DNA of 64,000 bases. Origin: Prasinococcaceae sp. CCMP 1430 (Eukaryota > Plantae > Prasinodermophyta). Shown here one piece after another: positions 1 through 18,107 of this stretch. The stretch is from positions 450,250 to 514,249 of the forward strand of contig RQSC01000029.1 in NCBI GenBank assembly GCA_013416795.1. Reading direction: 5' to 3'. A program made the position numbers and the translations under genes. Each line of letters opens with the position of its first letter. Position 1 is the first letter of the stretch. The notes beneath the pieces are model-generated. The model searched no databases. It worked only from the letters and a program-made list of their open reading frames with translations, and was not told where the DNA came from.

Positions 1-1371
1 CGGCGGCGGCGCGTGCGCGTGCGGCGCGCGCGAGAGCACCACCACACGTCGCGGCGCGCGCGCGCTTTCGGCGCGCGCGGCCGTCGGAAAACGCGGACGG
101 AGCGGCGCCGCGACGCGCGTACCTGAGCGTCTCTCACTGCGCCCTTCCGCGTGCGTCCACACGAAAGACATTCAGAAACATCGCAAGGAATGGCAATTTG
201 ATTGAAAGAATGAGGCGCAGGGGGGAAGCCGCCTCAGACCCCTCCTTCTCGCCCCTCGCCCCTCGCCCCTCGACGCGGCCGACAAGAAACACGCGATTTG
301 CCGTCCCTTTTTATGTATCTGAGTGTATCACAAAGACGCCCTCTCCCATGCGTCCACAGCGCTCCTTCCGCAACACATTCAGAAACATTACGAGATAGGC
401 CACTTTAAATTCATCATATCCCTCTCCTCCATCCCCGCCCGCGCCGCGCGCCCCGCCCCTCCCTCCAGTATTAGGGTTCGCACTCGAGCTCGCGCCTCAT
501 GGCACGACAGGAGACATGCCCACGGGAGACTCGTATTGCGCATCAGCACATCAGTTTGAAAGCGAAACCTTGTGAGTGCCAGGGGGAATGACGGCAGCAC
601 CAGCACCATGTGGGTGCGTGTGCGTGTGTGAGTGCGTGCCCCACACAGCGCGCGCCGCGCACACACGCGCCCGCGCCCGCGCAGGCAGGCGCACGCGCGC
701 CTGGGCGCACGCGTGCGTGGGTGCGCGTGCACAAACACGCGAGCGCGCGCGGCCTCGCCCCCCCAACCCGGTCTATTTTGCGTAGGCCTGGGTCAAAGCT
801 TAGTTTTCAGGTTTTAAAGGGTTTCAACCCCTTCACCGTAAGATGTGACTTTAAAGGCAACACGAGACCCCCTCNNNNNNNNNNNNNNNNNNNNNNNNNN
901 NNNNNNNNNNNNNNNNNNNNNNNNNNNNNNNNNNNNNNNNNNNNNNNNNNNNNNNNNNNNNNNNNNNNNNNNNNNNNNNNNNNNNNNNNNNNNNNNNNNN
1001 NNNNNNNNNNNNNNNNNNNNNNNNNNNNNNNNNNNNNNNNNNNNNNNNNNNNNNNNNNNNNNNNNNNNNNNNNNNNNNNNNNNNNNNNNNNNNNNNNNNN
1101 NNNNNNNNNNNNNNNNNNNNNNNNNNNNNNNNNNNNNNNNNNNNNNNNNNNNNNNNNNNNNNNNNNNNNNNNNNNNNNNNNNNNNNNNNNNNNNNNNNNN
1201 NNNNNNNNNNNNNNNNNNNNNNNNNNNNNNNNNNNNNNNNNNNNNNNNNNNNNNNNNNNNNNNNNNNNNNNNNNNNNNNNNNNNNNNNNNNNNNNNNNNN
1301 NNNNNNNNNNNNNNNNNNNNNNNNNNNNNNNNNNNNNNNNNNNNNNNNNNNNNNNNNNNNNNNNNNNNNNN

Positions 1372-3883
1372 NCGGCCGGCGCGGCGCCGCGCGGTGCCCG
1401 CGGCGGTGGCGACCGAGCCCGAGTCGGAGCTGTCGGACTCGGACACGCCGAGCGCAGTGAAGGCCGCGGCGAACGGCAGCGCGGTGAACGGCGGCGCGCT
1501 CAACGGCAGCGCGCTCAACGGCAGCGCCAGCACGCCCAGCGCCCCGAAGAGCGCGGCGTACGGCATGGGGAAGAAGGGCGCGGCGACGACGAACGGCGCG
1601 GCGCCCGGCGCTCGCGCCCACGACCTGCGCGCGGCGGCCGACAGGCTCGCGGCGCTGCAGCAGGACCTGGAGGCCGAGCTCAACAAGCGCAAGGCGCTGG
1701 TCGACGAGGACGGCGGCGCGCCCGCCGCACACAGCTCGAGCATGAAGAAGAAGGGCGTCGCCGATGCGGTGGGCAAGACCGCCGCGGCGGCGGCAGGGGC
1801 GGCGGCGAAGGCGAGGATGCAGGCCAAGGCCGCCAAGAAGGCGGCCGCCCAGGCGCGGGCGCGGGCGGCCGAGACCGCGGCCAAGGCCGCCGCGGTGGAG
1901 GCGGCCAACCTCGCCATGCCCACGCCGCGCAAGCCCGACCCCCCGCCGCCGACCATCCCCGCCATCCCAGCCATGCCCACGGCGCCGGTGAACGCGGCGC
2001 CCCCGCCGAGGCCGAAGGCGCTGTCGCCGTCTCAGCTTTCGCGGGCAATGCCTCCGCAGGGGATGCCCCCGCCGGGGATGCCCGCGTCGACGGGGGCGCC
2101 GGCGTGGTCGATGCCTCCGCCGCCGAACACGGCCCCGCCGCCGGCCCAGCCGGCGCACAAGCCCGGCGCGAAGCTGATCATTCCCGGGCGGGGACCGGCC
2201 AACGCAGCACCCGCGCCCGCCGCGCAGGCCATGCCGCCGCCCGCGCAGGCCATNCGTACCGTGCCCGGGGTGCCGACGCCCCCGGCGGCGGCGCCCGTGG
2301 CGCCCGTGACGCCCATGCCCGTGGCGCCCACGGCGACGCTGAGCGGCACCGCCGCGCCAGCGGCGCCGTTGGCGCCGGCGGAGCCGCCAAAGAACCTGAA
2401 TGCCATGAACATCATCTTCGTCTCGTCGGAGTGCGCTCCGTGGTCCAAGACGGGCGGCCTCGGCGACGTCGCCGGCGCGCTGCCGCAAGGGCTTTCCAAG
2501 CGCGACCACCGCGTGATGGTGGTGACGCCGCGCTACTCAGACTACGCCGAGGCCGAGGACACGGGCGTGCTGGCGCGCTTCCCGCTCGCCGGGGGGGAGA
2601 TGGAGGTGCGCTACTTCCACGGGTACATCAACGGCGTGGACTACGTGTTCGTCGACTCGCCCGTGTTTTCCAACCTCAGCGACAACATTTACTCGGGCGG
2701 CCGCGAGGACGTCATGATGCGCAACGCGCTGCTGTGCCGAGCGGCGATCGAGGCGCCGTGGCTCGTGCCGTGCGGGGGCGTGCCCTACGGCGACAACAGG
2801 CTGATGTTCCTGTGCAACGACTGGCACACGGCGTTGCTGCCGGTGTTCTTGCAGGAGTGCTACAGGGAGTACGGCAAGCTCGAGTACGCGCGCTCCACCA
2901 TGATCCTGCACAACATGGCGTACCAAGGCAGAGGTCCGATGACCGACCTCAACATGTTCCACCTGCCGGAGCACTGCCACGTCAGGTTCTGCCTGGACGA
3001 CCCCGTCGGCGGCATCCACATGAACATCTTGATGGCGGGCATCAGGTACAGCCAGCGGCTGGTGGCGGTCAGCCCGGGGTACGCGTGGGAGTGCAAGACA
3101 CAGGAGGGTGGCTGGGGTCTGGACGAAGAGATGCGCGAGGCCGAATGGAAGCTCGCCGGCATCGTCAACGGCGTGAACACGGAGGAGTGGTCGCCGGACG
3201 TCGACCCGTGCCTCAAGTCGGACGGCTACACCAACTACTGGCTGGACGACCTGAAGGAGGGCAAGGCCAAGAACAAGCTCGCCCTGCAGAAGGAGCTCGG
3301 GCTGCCTGAGCGAGCGGACGTGCCGCTGGTGGGATTCATCGGCCGCCTCGACTACCAGAAGGGCGTCGACGTGATCGAGGAGACCTTGCCGTGGATGATG
3401 GGTCAGGACGTGCAGCTCGTCATGCTGGGCTCGGGGCGCGAGGACCTGGAGGCCTTCCTGCGGAGGGCTGAGCAGGACAACTCCGACCGCGTGCGTGGCT
3501 GGGTTGGATTTTCGGTGAAGACCGCGCATCGCATCACCGCCGGGTGCGACATGCTGCTCATGCCCTCGCGCTTCGAGCCCTGCGGCCTCAACCAGCTGTA
3601 CGCCATGCGCTACGGCACCGCGCCGGTCGTGCACGCCGTGGGCGGACTGCGCGACACCGTCCCGCCCTTCAACCCCTTCGAGGACACTGGCTACGGCTGG
3701 ACCTTCGACCGGTGCGAGGCGAGCGGCCTCAAGGAGGCCATGGGCAACGCGCTGGAGACTTACAGGAACCACCCCGACAGCTTTGAGAAAATGCAGAGGC
3801 GCATGATGACGCAGGACATGAGCTGGGACAACGCCGCGGAGATGTACGAAGGCGTGCTCGTCGATGCCCTCAACCAGTGGTAG
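1372..3883 (+). CDS. SS2: Soluble starch synthase II (GT5) with long Ala/Pro-rich N-terminal extension; 5' end lies in the assembly gap
   Basis: Motifs [37 protein letters not shown] and [19 protein letters not shown]; C-terminal ..NQW is typical of SSII; stop TAG at 3881-3883. Confidence 0.9.
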
Positions 3884-5922: not shown

Positions 5923-6407
5923 CGCCTCGCCCGGAGACCTCCCCGCCGGGAAAGGAAGGAGGGTGGGTGGGTGGGTGAGTGGGCGGGAAGGGCGTCGGCT
6001 GTGGCACACGCGTCACACGCGCACGCGCAGACGTACACACGCACGCACACGCACACACACGCACACACGCACACACACTAAACACACACACTAAACACAC
6101 ACACGCACGCACGCACGCACGCAGGCGCGCAGCATACGCATGCGCATTACAGTAAGTCAATCGAAGAAGCCTCTTACTCTATGTACATGTACATGCACGT
6201 GTTTTCGCGCCTTGATGGACCCTAACCCCAATATTCGCATTTGTGCTGCAAACGGCGCATCTTTGCTGCATTCGACGACCCCACCCCAAACCGTCGCGCC
6301 CCTCCGCGCGGGCACGCCAAAAAAAAAAAAAAAAAGGCGGCCGCGGCCGCGCCGGCCGCGAAGGCCGAGCGGACTTGGAAAAAAAAAACCGCAGCTGCGC
6401 GAATCTG

Positions 6408-6560
6408 TCTTCCATCCGCGTGCGGGTCAGGTCAAACGACGCCATGAAAAAGCCCTCCGTCCGTCCTTCGTCGTACAGCGTGCGCATCTTCCATCCGCGT
6501 GCGTGCGGGTAAAAAAAAGTAAAAAGCGCTCCGGACAAGCGTGCGAATCTTGGATCCGCA
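6408..6560. promoter_or_regulatory. Direct repeats in the A-tract-rich PGDH/AGPase divergent intergenic region
   Basis: TCTTCCATCCGCGTGCG is exact at 6408-6424 and 6487-6503; a degenerate third copy lies at about 6543-6560. Confidence 0.4.
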
Positions 6561-7334
6561 GGCCGGTAAAAAGTTAAAAAAAAAAAACTTAAGAATCGGC
6601 GCGGGGTTCAGAGCTGAGCCAGATATGGATTCGGGCTGATATTTTCTCGCGCCGACCGAAAAATCAAAAAAATCGGCGCGCGCGCGCGAGCGGCGCGGCG
6701 CCCGAGCGCATCGCCCACGGGAGAGCACCCTGATGGCGGGTCGTCCCATCGGATCGCACAGAAGGCCGCCGCGCGGCCGCGCGCGCGAGGGCGGGGGCCG
6801 CGGCCGCGATCGGATAAAGACGAGCTCGAAAAAAAAAAAAGAGTTCCCGTCAGACGCGGCGTTCGGTCAGATGCACCCCTCCGCACCGCACCCAACACGC
6901 GCGCCAAAAAAAAAAAAGGAAAAAAAGTTCTCAGAGGCGCACAGACTTCAGAAAAAGCATTGGTGCGCACCATTCGCGCGCACGACACGTCAAACAAAAA
7001 GGCGGCACCGACCGACCAACAAAAAAAAATAAAAACGGACATCTGCGCGTTACCCCAACGGATTGGATGGAGATTCGCGCCGTCCTCCCACGCGCCTGAG
7101 AATCTCGAACCCCGATAAAAATCGGCCTTTGTGGCGGTTGCGGGATCGGATTCGGTGCGCGCTTTTTGGGAGGACGTCGCCCGCGTGGCGGCGGGCGCCG
7201 CGGCGGTGGGCTTCGGGGCCGCGGCGGCGCCGAGGGGGGGCGCGGGCGCGGGCGCGGAGGAGACGAGGGAGGCGGNNNNNNNNNNNNNNNNNNNNNNNNN
7301 NNNNNNNNNNNNNNNNNNNNNNNNNNNNNNNNNN

Positions 7335-12844: not shown

Positions 12845-14629
12845 TCAGCAGACAGCGTTAGGGCCGCTGAGCACCGCTGACTCGCCGCCGTGCCCAACCT
12901 CAAGGACGACGGGACCGCTGTCCAGCCGCTGCAACCAGGGCTCGCCGTCGATCTGCATGGCCATCGCACGGTCCAACGGGCCGCGCGCGCCGCCTGCGTG
13001 CGGCAGCACCTCCAAGCGCACCTCCGACACCTGCGCGAGGCGCGTGGCGCCCGAGAGATGGGTCATGACGCCAGCGAGGTGGGCGCCGCCGCGGAGCGCG
13101 ACAACCTCTACCAAACCGTCTGCCATCGACATGTGGTCGCTGCAGTTGATCGGGGCATCACCGTGTCAGCGCGAGCGGGTCGGCGCAGTGAGCGCTACAT
13201 CGAGGAACGCAGACACGCTTGAGAACAGACGCGATCGCGCGAACGCGAGCGCACTCACCTGCACCCAGGAGGGCTGCCGCTCCCCTCTCCATGGGCAGCG
13301 CCACCAGCGCTCCAACCCCACCGCTGCCTCCACAAGTCACGCCCGCCGGCAAATGAGTTGACGTTGAGAATGACTACGCCAGTCGTGCCCTCAGGGAGTC
13401 TGATGTAGCGCCAAGAATTGGGGTCGCGCTCACATTCGTCGTCTGGAGTGCCCGCATCCCTGCCACCACGCACCCGCAGCACGACCCTGCCGCAGAGGCT
13501 CGCCTTTTGGCCGCAGCAGCCGCGCGTCAGGCCGCACGCCCAGCCCTGCCAAAACGCGGTGAGCACGTAGAGGAGCTTGTTGCTCATCCGTCGCCGCGAG
13601 CCTAGCTTGGAGCGCACAGACGCGCGGCGGCTTTGGTGGAAACCGTAAGCAATCTGCGCGTCCATGCCTGCGCCGCGCGTGCGCGGGCGCGGCCGGCGCC
13701 GCATGCAAGAAGCGCGCCGGGCGTCAGCGGGCGCACGGACGGGCAGACGCATGGGCGCGCGCGGGGCGGTGTGGGGATCGGGGAGCTCGCGCGCGCGCGC
13801 ACCGATGGACAGGTAGTTGAAGAACCTGCCGGTGGCTTCAGGCGCGTTGTGTTCGCACGAAAACGCGGGGGGAAGTCCGCCGCCCGCCAGCGCCGCGGCA
13901 GCCGCTCCCGCCCCCGGTCCGCCTGCTTTGAGACGCAGCGAGACCCGCCACCGGTCTAGGCGCACGATGGGCGCGCATGCGATTGCGTGCAGACGCGCGA
14001 GCAGCCTCTGCTTCAGCGGCGCGCGGCTAATAAGACCGCCGAAGCCGAGCCAGCCGGTGGCTCGTGCCATGTCATTGCCCGTCCCAAGCGGCAGGATGGC
14101 GACGGGCGTAATGGAGGGGTCCAAGCCGGCGTCGGCGAGCGCACCGAGCACCCAAGCAGCACTTCCGTCGCCTCCGGCCACGACGACCCGCACGCCGCGC
14201 CCACTGCGCCCAGCAGCCGACAGTCAGTGTCGCACACCAGCATTATTGCACTCACGCGCGCGCGCGCTCGCCCGTGCGACGTGCGTCGTACCTGCTTGCC
14301 ACTGCCACGAGCTCGGCTATGCGCGCCCCCGGTTCGGTCTCGTTCTGCAGGTCGAACACCTGCTTCGGCCCCAGCAGGTCGGCGAGCGCTGCGTGCACGC
14401 TCCTGCCGAGCAGCTCTCCGGACTGGCAGTTGACGAGCGCGACGCACGGCACGCGGCGCGCCGCGAGCGGCGAGTCGACCGGCGGCGCGCGCAGGTCGCC
14501 CACGTCCAGTGCTTGAAGCGAGCGCGAGGACAGGCGCAACGCATCGGCGCCTCCCAGCGATTTGCGCGCGGCAAGCGCGGACCCCCTGCCCGCGTCGCCA
14601 TGCCGGCCACCAGCCGCCAGCAGGCCCGC
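12845..14629 (-). CDS. DGK: Diacylglycerol kinase; introns 14204-14291, 13668-13802 and 13140-13258; native ATG apparently displaced to 16836-16838 by the mitochondrial insertion
   Basis: Motifs VALVNCQSG, RVVVAGGDGS, LPLGTGND, FFNYLSIG|MDAQIAYGFH, ADGLVEVV and MQIDGEPW. All three GT-AG introns preserve the frame. Confidence 0.85.
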
Positions 14630-14630
14630 C

Positions 14631-14861
14631 CTCTCAACCATGGACTCGGTGAAATTGAAGTCCCCGTGAAGATGCGGGGTACTCACGGTAAGGCGAGAAG
14701 ACCCCGTGGACCTTTACTCAAGCCCTGCATTGAGTGTCGGGACCTGTGTGCGCAGACTAGGTAGGAGCGGTATCCATAGGTTGCGGCCTAGAGGACACGC
14801 ATCAGTGAGAGACTACCCACACACACCGGCGCTCTCACCCTGTGGACAGTGCATGGTGGAG

Positions 14862-14901
<40 letters not shown>

Positions 14902-15123
14902 TGTATGCAAGGTAGGCTCACCCCGGACGGCAACCGGGCGAGTGGGGAGAATGCCCTATGCCTGCTTGACTGTAAGATGGGCACATCGAGCAGAGACGAA
15001 AGTCGATCATACTGAACCGGAGTTTCCTTGTGGAAGGGGCTTCGCTCAACGGATCAAAGGTACCCCGGGGATAACAGGCTTATACTTCCCGAGAGCTCGA
15101 ATCGACGGAAGTGTTTGGCACCT
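14631..15123 (+). rRNA. rnl: Mitochondrial large-subunit rRNA fragment (domain V, about E. coli 23S 1985-2500), within the NUMT
   Basis: Conserved tracts GACTCGGTGAAATTG, AAGACCCCGTG, TTTGACTGGGGCGGT, GGGGATAACAGGC and TTTGGCACCT. Confidence 0.92.
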
Positions 15124-15330
15124 CACACATCGGGGCAAAGAAGAAACCTTCTTTGATGAAGGCAGAATGCGGGAACCTTCAGAACGAACAATCCGCAGGA
15201 AAGAGTGGTCTTTCCTCAACGACTCAACGCCTTCCTTTCTTTGAAGTGGGGTGACCCACACACAAAGAGAGAAGAGAGAGTCTTTCTTTTCTTGAAAAAG
15301 AAAAACGGTCGTCGACCCAAAGACGAACGC
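15124..15330 (+). ncRNA. Group I intron core at rnl position 2500, lacking the 3' splice site and exon
   Basis: Begins after U2500. Elements: P10 guide ACATCG (15127-32, complementary to the expected exon CGATGT), P3 GAAGGC/GCCTTC, P AATGCGGGAA (15166), Q AATCCGCAG (15190), R CTCAACGACTC (15215), S AAGAGAGAGTC (15272), and P8, P9 and P9.1 hairpins. Confidence 0.85.
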
Positions 15331-15343
15331 ACACAGAAAAAAC

Positions 15344-15391
15344 ATCCTTTCAAAAAAAAGACTTTTTTCCCTGTCTTTTCCTTTGAAGGAT
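15344..15391. terminator. Stem-loop between the convergent rnl/intron and cob units
   Basis: ATCCTTTCAAA pairs imperfectly with TTTGAAGGAT; an inner AAAAGAC/GTCTTTT stem is present. Confidence 0.3.
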
Positions 15392-15422
15392 AAATAAAAA
15401 ATATATCTACTACCTTTCTTTT

Positions 15423-16580
15423 TCATTGAACCTTCCATCGAAGAAGGAGGTTTTCAAGGCGTCCAAGGACCGGGGTCAGCACAAGGAAGTAGAAAAAGAA
15501 GTAAAAGGTCAAAATTTGACCGATTTCAAGGTAGGGGGACTCGACAGGCATCGCACCAATCCATCCAAGAAGAAGGGCGGTGGCCACAAAGGACCAGTAC
15601 GCCATTGCTGCCAATGGTCGGAAGGCGTTTGATCGAACAGATGCTGTATGAAGCCAAGGCATGAGTCCGAGGCAGACAAAGGTTGCAATCATTGCCACAA
15701 CCCCAAGAAGTTTGTCTGGAATAGACCGAAGAACAGCGTAAAAAGGAAGGACGTAGAACTCTGGAACAATGTGTGCAGGGGTACTCAAAGGGTTTGCTGG
15801 AATGTAGTTATCCGCATGCCCCAAATAGTTGGGTGCATAATGGACAAAGCAAGAGAAAATAATTGCAAAGACCAACCAGGCCACAAGGTCTTTCACATAG
15901 AAAAGAGGGTACAAAGGATGCTTGTCTGTGTGTGAGGGAACTCCCACAGGGTTGTTTGACCCATACTGGTGAAGGGCTGCAATGTGAAGGATAGAAAGTC
16001 CAGCAATCACAAAGGGAAGAAGGTAGTGAAGGCTAAAGAATCGGTTCAAGGTTGCGTTATCCACGGAAAACCCTCCCCACAGCCAGACAACAACGTCATT
16101 TCCTACAATTGGAATAACGGATGCAAGGCTGGTAATCACCGTTGCTCCCCACAGAGACATCTGCCCCCAAGGCAAGACATACCCAATAAAGGCTGTCAAA
16201 ATCATCAAAAGAAGGAGGACAACCCCAAGAACCCACACGAGTTCTCGTGGACTTGTGTAAGACCCATAATAGAGTCCTCGAAGAATATGAATATAGACGA
16301 CGATGAAAAACATTCCGGCTCCATTTGCGTGAAGATACCGGAGGAACCACCCTCCTTCAACATCTCGCATAATATGCTCAACGCTCGAAAAGGCAAGGTC
16401 CACGTGGGGAGTATAATGCATTGCAAGGAAGATTCCACTTGCAATTTGGATCCCAAGGCAGATTCCTGCAAGAGATCCGAATCCCCACATATAGGTCAAA
16501 TTCGAAGGGGTCGGGTAATCACTCACGTGATCATTCACCACACTCAAGACTGGTTGAGTGATCAAGGCTGATCGACGCAT
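15423..16580 (-). CDS. cob: Apocytochrome b (385 aa, standard code), intact within the NUMT; ORF extends 57 codons upstream to ATG 16751
   Basis: Motifs [37 protein letters not shown] and SLHYLLP; all four heme His residues are present; no frameshift or internal stop. Confidence 0.97.
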
Positions 16581-17041
16581 GAAAGGAGTCGGTCGGTGGT
16601 TTTCAGTCATCGGTCCGAAGGCTCCTTTTCCAAAGGCTTCTGTGTCTTGGATGGGTGCATCCCACAAAGGGGCCATTGAAAGGGGTGCGGTAGACGCAGG
16701 AAGAAGGGTTGTTTTGTTCCGTGTTCCTGAAAGTTTCACAAAGGTTGACATAAATCATGAAAAGAATGGAAAGATCATCCCAAGAGATCTCTTTTTTTCT
16801 TCTTTTTTTGAAAGATAGAGAGACTTTTTTTTTTCCATCGCGCGCCCGCTGCCGCCCGCCGCAGCGCCCGCCGCACGCCGCTACGTGCCAGGCGCACGCC
16901 CCGCACCCCTTGTGCCACCTGTGGGCGCCCGAGCTGCAGCCCTCCCCCCACCCCACCCCACCCCATCTCAAGCACGCCGCACCAGGCAGCGCACACGGTG
17001 CACACGATTTGCACTTTTCGGAATTTCCCGCCGTTTACCCG

Positions 17042-17061
17042 AACCCTAACCTAACCCTAAA
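17042..17061. promoter_or_regulatory. Telo-box-like interstitial telomere motif
   Basis: AACCCTAACCTAACCCTAAA lies upstream of PrmA. Confidence 0.5.
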
Positions 17062-17095
17062 GGGCGCTGTGTCAAACCTTAACCTTTGTGGAGCG

Positions 17096-18107
17096 ATGAG
17101 GCCGCGACGTGCAGCTGAGCCCTGCCACGGGGGGGAAGGAGGGGAGGGGGAGGGGGGGGAGGGTCACTCTGCTCTGCGGCGTCGGCGTCCGCCCGCGCGG
17201 CCGGCGGGGCCGGCGAGGGCGACGAGGGCGACGGGGACGCCGTCCTCGGGCAGGACGAAGGCATCGGGGGCGATGGGTCGACCCCTGTGATCGACGCGCA
17301 GGCGCAATGGCTGAGCGCCTTCTGCGGGTCGGAGGAGGAGGACTGGGTGGCCGCCATCAAGAGGGCGAGCTATGTGCCGACTGAGGCTGCGCCCGGGGTG
17401 TGGCTCGTGCCCGATTGGAGCGATGGGGCCGTGCCAGACGAGCAGCAGTCGGCCTCATTTGAGCCGCCTACGGGTGCAGTCAAGGTGGCGCTGCAGCCAG
17501 GGGTGGCGTTCGGCACTGGCGAGCACCCGACGACGCGCCTCTGCCTCGGGGCGTTGGCGCCGGGCGGCCGCGCTGCCGTGCGACCCGGCGATGAGGTGTT
17601 GGACTATGGCGCGGGCAGCGGGGTGCTGGCGCTCTTGGCGTTGAAACTCGGCGCGGCGCGCGCGGTCGGGGTCGATAGTGACGCCTCGGCGGTGTCCTCC
17701 GCCGAGACCAACGCTGCGCTCAATGGGTATGACGAGACGAGCTTCCGCTGCTATGAGGTGGACCCGGAGGACGACGCGGCTCGGCCACTCGCGGCCGAGG
17801 TTGACGAGACCTTTGACGTGGTCGTGGCCAACATTTTGCAGGTACGTGCGCGCATAGTCGGTGGCGGCTGGTAGGCATGCGCCCAAGTACTGACCATCGA
17901 ACGCCTCCCTCGGCACAGGGACCGCTGATTGAATTGGAACCGAGGCTGGCGCGCGCGTCGCGGCCCGGGGCGCGATTGGTGCTCAGCGGCGTGCTGGCGG
18001 GCGAGCAAGCGACGGCCGCGGTGGCAAAGTACGGTGAGCATTTCGAGGACTTGCGCGTCGCAGAGGAAGATGGATGGGCGTGCGTGACCGGTGTGCGAAA
18101 GCGATAG
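17096..18107 (+). CDS. prmA: Ribosomal protein L11 methyltransferase; intron 17842-17918; 5' end uncertain
   Basis: Motifs AFGTGEHPTTRLCL, VLDYGAGSGVLA, DVVVANIL|GPL and LVLSGVL. Confidence 0.85.

What the first reader, a model, noticed from the sequence alone, without database searches (positions are those of the whole stretch)
15423..16838. Intact cob under a nuclear promoter with a presequence-like extension: gene transfer caught in the act?
Seen: cob is co-oriented with DGK and lies just downstream of the displaced DGK ATG. That ATG (16838) is in frame with cob and separated only by one TGA (16757-16755). The next ATG (16751) opens a 57-aa extension whose first 30 residues ([30 protein letters not shown]) are S/T/K/R-rich with no acidic residue. 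Established: cob is retained in essentially all respiring mitochondrial genomes. Inference: the nuclear copy could be transcribed; functional import is unlikely and codon usage is still mitochondrial.
Basis: partly seen in the sequence, partly recalled or inferred. Interest (0 to 1): 0.7.

Follow-up and report, generated by a model that had tools for sequence, protein, structure and literature searches.

The report
Young unfixed mitochondrial DNA insert carrying cob
A 2.2-kb piece of the alga's own mitochondrial DNA, with an intact cytochrome b gene, sits inside the start of a nuclear lipid-kinase gene, but the "import signal" is part of the mitochondrial gene itself, every other dataset lacks the insert, and so this is an ordinary very recent mitochondrial insertion (or an assembly error).

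Summary
Window 15423-16751 (-) is an intact 442-codon cob. The ATG at 16838 is in frame with it, and one TGA (16757-16755) lies between.

The interpretation does not hold. The whole low-GC block, about 14632-16836, is one collinear piece of Prasinoderma mtDNA: part of rnl exon b, the 5' half of the trans-spliced group I intron, a spacer and cob. It is 98.5-99% identical to environmental mitochondrial contigs.

The 57-residue "presequence-like" extension is native to mitochondrial cob. The same 442-codon ORF stands on at least 24 mitochondrial contigs, and strain CCMP1220 has a 438-codon version.

Differences from the mitochondrial haplotypes are synonymous in the conserved core. GC3 is 0.47, against 0.77-0.86 in neighbouring nuclear genes.

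The insert is not fixed. Ten Tara and Logan contigs, the P. coloniale gene model PRCOL_00002791, and contigs of two DNA runs with identical flanks all carry an empty site. There, 50 nt encoding DGK codons 2-18 stand in place of the 2,199 nt.

The junctions show GG and GAGA microhomology, which fits end-joining. I found no junction-spanning DNA or RNA anywhere.

Verdict: a zero-age, unfixed NUMT that disrupts DGK, or less likely an assembly artefact. It is not a functional gene transfer. Another first-stage note of this scan (s1-405982) covers the same stretch.

The parts
14632..16836 (-). Mitochondrial insert (NUMT). 2,199 nt are unambiguously mitochondrial (14636-16834); microhomology GAGA (14632-14635) and GG (16835-16836) is shared with the target site.
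   Evidence: blastn to mitochondrial contigs L001-L007 is collinear at 98.5-99%. GC drops from about 0.7 to 0.3-0.5. Junction sequences. Read joint 14635->16835.
15423..16751 (-). Intact cob (apocytochrome b) ORF, 442 codons plus TGA.
   Evidence: About 8 hydrophobic segments, GRAVY 0.61, GC3 0.47.
16581..16751 (-). 57-codon N-terminal extension of cob, native to the mitochondrial gene.
   Evidence: Same extension in P0123-P0134 from mitochondrial contigs and in the CCMP1220 mitochondrial protein P0122. The canonical Met column (M58) is Lys in the related lineages P0002 and P0003.
16755..16838 (-). DGK start codon (16838-16836) now opening a 27-codon ORF that runs through mitochondrial spacer to TGA 16757-16755.
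   Evidence: The same TGA two codons before the cob ATG is present in mtDNA.
15071..15304 (+). 5' fragment of the trans-spliced group I intron Pr.rnl.2 (site 2500 of rnl).
   Evidence: Rfam Intron_gpI 51.4 bits, E 2.6e-11. Layout as described for P. coloniale mtDNA in PMC3873408.
14662..15157 (+). 3' part of mitochondrial rnl exon b.
   Evidence: Rfam LSU_rRNA_bacteria 339 bits. An RNA contig of run X15 runs on from 14632 into mitochondrial, not nuclear, sequence.
14639..14641 (-). Mitochondrion-derived ATG (context CCATGG) in frame with the rest of DGK. It would give MVER-AGLLAAGG... in place of MGGAAAAPAGSPASPAASER-AGLL...
   Evidence: Sequence read directly and compared with P0157 and P0160.
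14294..14631 (-). Remainder of DGK exon 1 (nuclear).
   Evidence: tblastn of P0157 residues 19-132 is 100% identical to 14635-14294.
16837..17290 (.). Nuclear intergenic region between DGK (-) and a PrmA-like methyltransferase gene (+); presumed shared promoter region.
   Evidence: PrmA Pfam hit for ORF 17287-17874. The region is present with the same flanks in empty-site contigs. Promoter activity is inferred, not shown.

Best explanation
A 2.2-kb fragment of the alga's own mitochondrial DNA was captured during end-joining repair of a double-strand break in codon 2 of a nuclear diacylglycerol kinase gene. The alga is Prasinoderma coloniale or a very close relative. The fragment replaced 50 nt of coding sequence. 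The event is so recent that the copy is indistinguishable from mitochondrial sequence, which is why cob is still intact. It is not fixed: all other sampled genomes keep the empty site. The N-terminal extension is the mitochondrial gene's own 5' coding region, not an acquired presequence. The insert has no function as a nuclear cob gene. Its likely effect is to cripple DGK expression, because the DGK ORF now lies 2.2 kb behind its promoter, after a 27-codon ORF and the 442-codon cob ORF. Shown: mitochondrial origin, collinearity, the native extension, the empty-site alleles and the junction microhomology. Inferred: the repair mechanism, the age, and the effect on DGK.
For: The insert is one collinear match to mitochondrial contigs at 98.5-99% identity. 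It contains an rnl exon piece and a group I intron half on the strand opposite to cob, exactly as in the published P. coloniale mtDNA. The same 442-aa cob with the same extension stands on mitochondrial contigs beside rps12, nad and atp genes. Against 7 mitochondrial haplotypes, differences in the cob core are synonymous third-position changes (one exception is private to L001); against L002-L007 the 4 replacements lie in the fast-evolving extension. The 3 window-unique changes are all third-position. GC3 is 0.47 against 0.77-0.86 in nuclear neighbours. The empty site ...GCGATGG[50 nt]GAGAGGGCGG... is found in 10 independent Tara and Logan contigs, in gene model PRCOL_00002791, and in Logan contigs of DNA runs X1 and X3, whose flanks match the window with 0 mismatches over about 1.46 kb. 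Microhomology is GG and GAGA at the two junctions. All 14 runs of organism A hold 0.97 of the sampled 31-mers. The missing 3% is about what the two junctions plus the 17131-17173 length difference would remove. This implies that their mtDNA is essentially identical to the insert (inference).
Against: No read, contig or called protein outside the window's own assembly spans either junction, so the insert's physical existence rests on this assembly alone. The replaced 50 nt are extremely GC-rich, the kind of place where assemblies break. The same assembly also differs from runs X1 and X3 by a 123-nt length change 300 nt away. Contigs cannot show minority alleles, so I cannot say whether the insert-bearing allele co-exists in those runs.
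Confidence: 0.75

Rival explanations
1. Assembly artefact. The true genome has only the 50-nt empty site, and mitochondrial sequence was stitched in by chimeric reads or by gap closing at an extremely GC-rich stretch.
For: Contigs of two DNA runs with flanks identical to the window carry the empty site. Every other source is also empty. No junction was found elsewhere. A second discrepancy lies at 17131-17173.
Against: Both ends return to the same locus, 50 nt apart, in the correct orientation. The insert is a single collinear 2.2-kb mitochondrial piece. Two independent chimeras would land within 2.2 kb of each other and in a compatible orientation in a 54.5-kb mtDNA only about 4% of the time (my estimate). 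The combination of 2-4 nt microhomology and a small target deletion is the classic signature of a real end-joining capture.
Confidence: 0.22
2. Incipient functional transfer. cob is transcribed from the DGK promoter, translated in the cytosol, and imported using the extension as a presequence.
For: cob is co-oriented with DGK, intact, readable with the standard code (it ends in TGA), and lies 87 nt behind the DGK ATG. The first 30 residues are basic and hydroxylated with no acidic residue.
Against: The extension is native mitochondrial sequence, not an acquisition. An upstream 27-codon ORF ends 3 nt before the cob ATG. Codon usage is mitochondrial. Cytochrome b has about 8 strongly hydrophobic segments, and from general knowledge it has not been found functionally relocated to the nucleus. 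The mitochondrial gene is retained in all mitochondrial contigs. The allele is not fixed. RNA contigs on the region are mitochondrial, and one runs on into mtDNA at 14632.
Confidence: 0.01

Closest known systems
NUMTs: nuclear insertions of mitochondrial DNA captured at double-strand breaks by non-homologous or microhomology-mediated end joining (reviewed in PMC2820518; primate cases in PMC2567098)
   Same: A bulk mtDNA fragment containing coding and non-coding parts of both strands. Short junction microhomology (2 and 4 nt). A small target-site deletion (50 nt). Presence/absence polymorphism. Disruption of a gene, as in human disease-causing NUMTs.
   Different: It is essentially zero-age, so a full-length standard-code mitochondrial ORF is still intact. 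It landed exactly in codon 2 of a gene, in the sense orientation. So far it is supported by a single assembly only.
Published Prasinoderma coloniale CCMP1220 mitochondrial genome (KF387569; Pombert et al. 2013, PMC3873408)
   Same: Same local gene layout: cob, then on the opposite strand the 5' half of the trans-spliced intron Pr.rnl.2 and rnl exon b. cob is annotated with a long N-terminal extension (438 aa).
   Different: The window's cob is only 95% identical in protein to CCMP1220, with most changes in the extension. It is 98.5-99% identical in DNA to Tara Oceans mitochondrial haplotypes, so the source was another strain's mtDNA.
Functional mitochondrion-to-nucleus gene relocations (for example plant rps and sdh genes, or cox2 in legumes and chlorophyceans; from general knowledge)
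   Same: The starting material would look like this: an intact organelle ORF placed behind a nuclear promoter.
   Different: Those cases show an acquired presequence or a split gene, ameliorated codon usage, nuclear introns or UTRs, fixation, and decay or loss of the organelle copy. None of these is seen here.

Membership tests
NUMT | Sequence derived from the lineage's mitochondrial genome | tested here: met
   98.5-99% collinear identity to Prasinoderma mitochondrial contigs over 2.2 kb. Rfam LSU and group I intron hits, Pfam cytochrome b.
NUMT | Flanked on both sides by nuclear DNA of one locus | tested here: met
   Both flanks are contiguous in empty-site contigs L008-L017 and in gene model P0157.
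NUMT | End-joining signature at the junctions (microhomology, small target deletion) | tested here: met
   GG and GAGA microhomology and a 50-nt deletion.
NUMT | Junctions confirmed by data independent of the assembly | tested here: not met
   Contigs of runs X1 and X3 carry the empty site. No junction ORF is on record. There was no junction hit in JGI metagenomes, but these lack the locus altogether. Contigs cannot exclude a minority allele.
Functional organelle-to-nucleus gene transfer | Acquired N-terminal targeting sequence that is not part of the organelle gene | tested here: not met
   The extension is present in mitochondrial cob of all Prasinoderma mitochondrial contigs and of CCMP1220.
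Functional organelle-to-nucleus gene transfer | Nuclear-type codon usage or base composition | tested here: not met
   GC3 is 0.47 against 0.77-0.86 in neighbouring nuclear ORFs.
Functional organelle-to-nucleus gene transfer | Fixation of the nuclear copy, with loss or decay of the organelle copy | tested here: not met
   The empty site is found in all other sources. cob is intact on all mitochondrial contigs.
Functional organelle-to-nucleus gene transfer | Nuclear (capped, polyadenylated) transcript of the transferred gene | tested here: inconclusive
   Only metatranscriptome contigs from wild populations were available. They cover mitochondrial sequence only, and one continues into mtDNA at 14632. 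No RNA from an insert-bearing culture was available.

The most novel reading that the evidence does not exclude
The insert is a real allele segregating in a culture. cob, with its native basic and hydroxylated extension, is transcribed from the DGK promoter and translated in the cytosol. That would be a natural first step towards relocating the one gene (with cox1) that is almost never relocated, and it could be used to test the hydrophobicity barrier directly.
Probability: 0.02. Interest if true: 0.8.

Novelty: new member of a known kind. Interest (0 to 1): 0.2.

Why it matters
As a gene-transfer story it does not matter: nothing beyond raw DNA transfer has happened. It has three modest uses. 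First, if real, it is a zero-age NUMT with a known empty site, exact junctions and a disrupted host gene, in a picoalga with a compact genome. That is a clean example of end-joining capture and of NUMT insertional mutagenesis outside animals and yeast. Second, it flags a locus where this assembly disagrees with reads of apparently the same strain, so DGK annotation on this assembly will be wrong. Third, it shows in passing that cytochrome b in this algal group carries a genuine mitochondrially encoded N-terminal extension.

Tried and rejected
I looked for the insert-bearing allele elsewhere by exact look-up of four ORFs that cross the junctions: 16603-16971 (-), 14252-14686 (-), 16757-17290 (+) and 14252-14641 (-). 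None is on record. This is weak evidence, because exact identity and the same gene call are required.

I scanned JGI metagenome contigs for the low-junction 25-mer and found nothing. A control 29-mer common to both alleles also found nothing, so that collection does not hold the locus and the blank is uninformative.

Genome contigs was not used, because it holds only bacteria and archaea.

I considered an RNA-mediated (cDNA) origin and rejected it. The insert carries genes of both strands, a spacer and an unspliced intron half.

I considered several joined mitochondrial fragments and rejected that too. The match to the mitochondrial contigs is collinear; the only interruption is a spacer indel of about 50 nt that mitochondrial contig L001 shares with the window.

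I considered further mitochondrial pieces in the window. The other low-GC stretches at 1001-2000 and 6001-7000 do not match mtDNA.

TargetP and MitoFates are not available. I computed only composition and charge.

Full report
**What is in the sequence**

The window is about 70% GC nuclear DNA. One sharp low-GC block (0.30-0.54) runs from about 14650 to 16835.

On the minus strand, 15423-16751 is an uninterrupted 442-codon ORF with full-length cytochrome b domains: PF00033 at 1.2e-80 and PF00032 at 4.6e-35.

The ATG at 16838-16836 is in frame with it. It opens a 27-codon ORF that stops at TGA 16757-16755, one codon before the cob ATG at 16751.

The first 30 residues of the ORF have three basic residues, no acidic residue and nine S/T.

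Downstream on the same strand lie the ORFs of a diacylglycerol kinase (DAGK_cat and DAGK_acc). Upstream and divergent is a PrmA-like methyltransferase.

**What the block is**

Rfam finds a mitochondrial-type LSU rRNA segment on the plus strand (14662-15157, 339 bits). It also finds a group I intron (15071-15304, 51 bits), that is, on the strand opposite to cob.

The cob protein's closest relatives are Prasinoderma sequences. One cluster holds the P. coloniale mitochondrial protein YP_008999858 (438 aa, 95% identical) and many 442-aa proteins from Tara and Logan assemblies (99-100%).

The contigs that carry those proteins are plainly mitochondrial, with rps12, nad, cox, atp and ribosomal protein genes around cob.

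blastn shows that window 14632-16833 is collinear with these contigs at 98.5-99% identity. The only interruption is a spacer indel of about 50 nt, which the window shares with mitochondrial contig L001.

The layout is that published for P. coloniale CCMP1220 mtDNA: cob, then on the other strand the 5' half of the trans-spliced intron at rnl site 2500 and rnl exon b (PMC3873408).

No other part of the window matches mtDNA.

The block is a single bulk-DNA fragment of mtDNA, that is, a NUMT.

**The "presequence-like extension"**

The 57 extra N-terminal codons are not something the nuclear copy gained.

- The identical ORF with the same N-terminus ([13 protein letters not shown]...) is called on at least 24 mitochondrial contigs.
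- CCMP1220 has a diverged version with in-frame length differences (438 aa).
- More distant relatives have extensions of other lengths (454 and 413 aa).
- The TGA that precedes the ATG is also mitochondrial.
- In two related lineages (P0002, P0003) the column of the canonical start Met (M58 here) is Lys, so there the extension must be translated in the mitochondrion.

**Age**

Against seven mitochondrial haplotypes, cob differs at 9-13 codons.

- In the conserved core the differences are synonymous third-position changes. The one exception is a Leu-to-Phe change private to mitochondrial contig L001.
- Against L002-L007, the four replacements all lie in the fast-evolving extension.
- The three changes unique to the window are all third-position.

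This is the pattern of purifying selection inside mitochondria, not of neutral decay in the nucleus.

GC3 of cob is 0.47, against 0.77-0.86 for four neighbouring nuclear ORFs.

Fourteen DNA runs of the organism each hold 0.97 of the sampled 31-mers of 13900-17600. The missing 3% is about what the two junctions and a length difference at 17131-17173 would remove. By inference, the strain's own mtDNA is essentially identical to the insert.

**The empty site**

A search with the nuclear part of DGK exon 1 found a 145-aa ORF beginning MGGAAAAPAGSPTSPAVSER-AGLLAAGG....

Its cluster holds the P. coloniale gene model PRCOL_00002791 (500 aa), which begins in the same way. Residues 19-132 of that model are 100% identical to window 14635-14294.

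Ten contigs from different Tara samples and two Logan runs carry this allele. Their DNA reads ...GCGCGCGATGG [50 nt] GAGAGGGCGGGCCTG... The window reads ...GCGCGCGATGG [2,199 nt of mtDNA] GAGAGGGCGGGCCTG....

The 50 nt are nowhere in the window.

So ATG 16838 is the real DGK start codon. The insert replaced codons 2-18.

At the junctions the mitochondrial source reads ...CCCAGG|AAAA and ...GGTTGAGA|CAGC. This gives 2-nt (GG) and 4-nt (GAGA) microhomologies with the target. It is the classic end-joining signature of NUMT capture (background in PMC2820518 and PMC2567098; titles and abstracts seen, the rest from general knowledge).

**Reads**

Logan contigs of two DNA runs of the organism (X1, X3) match the window's flanks with no mismatch over about 1.46 kb. 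Tara contigs differ there by 0.3-0.8%, and by more upstream.

Both X1 and X3 jump from 14635 to 16835 with 50 other letters between. That is the empty site.

No contig of these runs lay on the mitochondrial part. The tool warns that such holes prove nothing.

RNA contigs from two metatranscriptomes cover only mitochondrial sequence. The one that reaches 14632 continues with mitochondrial rnl sequence, not DGK. They come from wild populations, which carry the empty site, so they cannot test expression of the insert.

Exact look-ups of four junction-crossing ORFs found nothing. The JGI metagenome collection does not hold the locus at all.

**Interpretation**

The most likely explanation (about 0.75) is a real, extremely recent and unfixed NUMT in the DNA that was assembled.

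The alternative (about 0.22) is an assembly artefact at a very GC-rich 50-nt stretch. Three features argue against it:

- the insert is a single collinear 2.2-kb fragment;
- it returns to the same locus in the right orientation;
- it shows microhomology plus a small deletion.

By my rough estimate, two independent chimeras would fall that close and in a compatible orientation in a 54.5-kb mtDNA only about 4% of the time.

Either way, nothing supports a functional cob transfer (about 0.01):

- no presequence was acquired;
- codon usage is mitochondrial;
- an upstream ORF precedes cob;
- the protein is very hydrophobic, with about 8 hydrophobic segments and GRAVY 0.61;
- the mitochondrial gene is retained;
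- the allele is not fixed.

If the allele is real, its probable phenotype is loss or strong reduction of DGK. The DGK ORF has no Met in the rest of exon 1. It would have to start at a mitochondrion-derived in-frame ATG (14641, context CCATGG, giving MVER-AGLL...), which lies 2.2 kb from the promoter behind the cob ORF. This is inference.

**Comparison and novelty**

This is a new instance of a well-known kind, a NUMT. It is notable only for being zero-age, polymorphic and placed precisely in a start codon region, in a picoalga.

It is not a member of the class of functional organelle-to-nucleus transfers. Three defining features were tested and not met: an acquired presequence, ameliorated codon usage, and fixation with organelle-copy decay. 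One, a nuclear transcript, could not be tested.

Interest is low (0.2).

Noticed in passing
window 17131-17173: Contigs of runs X1 and X3 hold 166 letters where the window has 43, in a C-rich low-complexity stretch of the DGK/PrmA intergenic region. This is either a length polymorphism or a collapsed repeat in this assembly. It is a second disagreement with the reads within 300 nt of the insert.
   Followed up: no
window 16581-16751 and alignment A1: Cytochrome b of Prasinoderma and its relatives carries a mitochondrially encoded N-terminal extension of about 25-70 residues. It evolves fast but stays in frame. In two lineages (P0002, P0003) the canonical start Met is Lys, so the extension must be translated there.
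   Followed up: partly
window 14639-14641 (-): The last bases of the mitochondrial fragment supply an in-frame ATG in a CCATGG context, three codons before the junction. An N-terminally shortened DGK (MVER-AGLL...) remains encodable.
   Followed up: partly
window about 17040-17060: Two telomere-like TTAGGGTT motifs lie in the DGK/PrmA intergenic region. They are also present in four of the six empty-site Tara/Logan contigs checked, so they are unrelated to the insertion. They may be a telo-box-like promoter element.
   Followed up: partly
window 15342-15353: The window and mitochondrial contig L001 both lack a spacer segment of about 50 nt between cob and the intron half that mitochondrial contigs L002-L007 have. 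This marks the mitochondrial haplotype group from which the insert came.
   Followed up: partly
window 1001-2000 and 6001-7000: Two further stretches have lowered GC (0.49, 0.58) and strong AT skew (0.52, 0.36). They do not match the mitochondrial contigs. Their nature was not examined.
   Followed up: no
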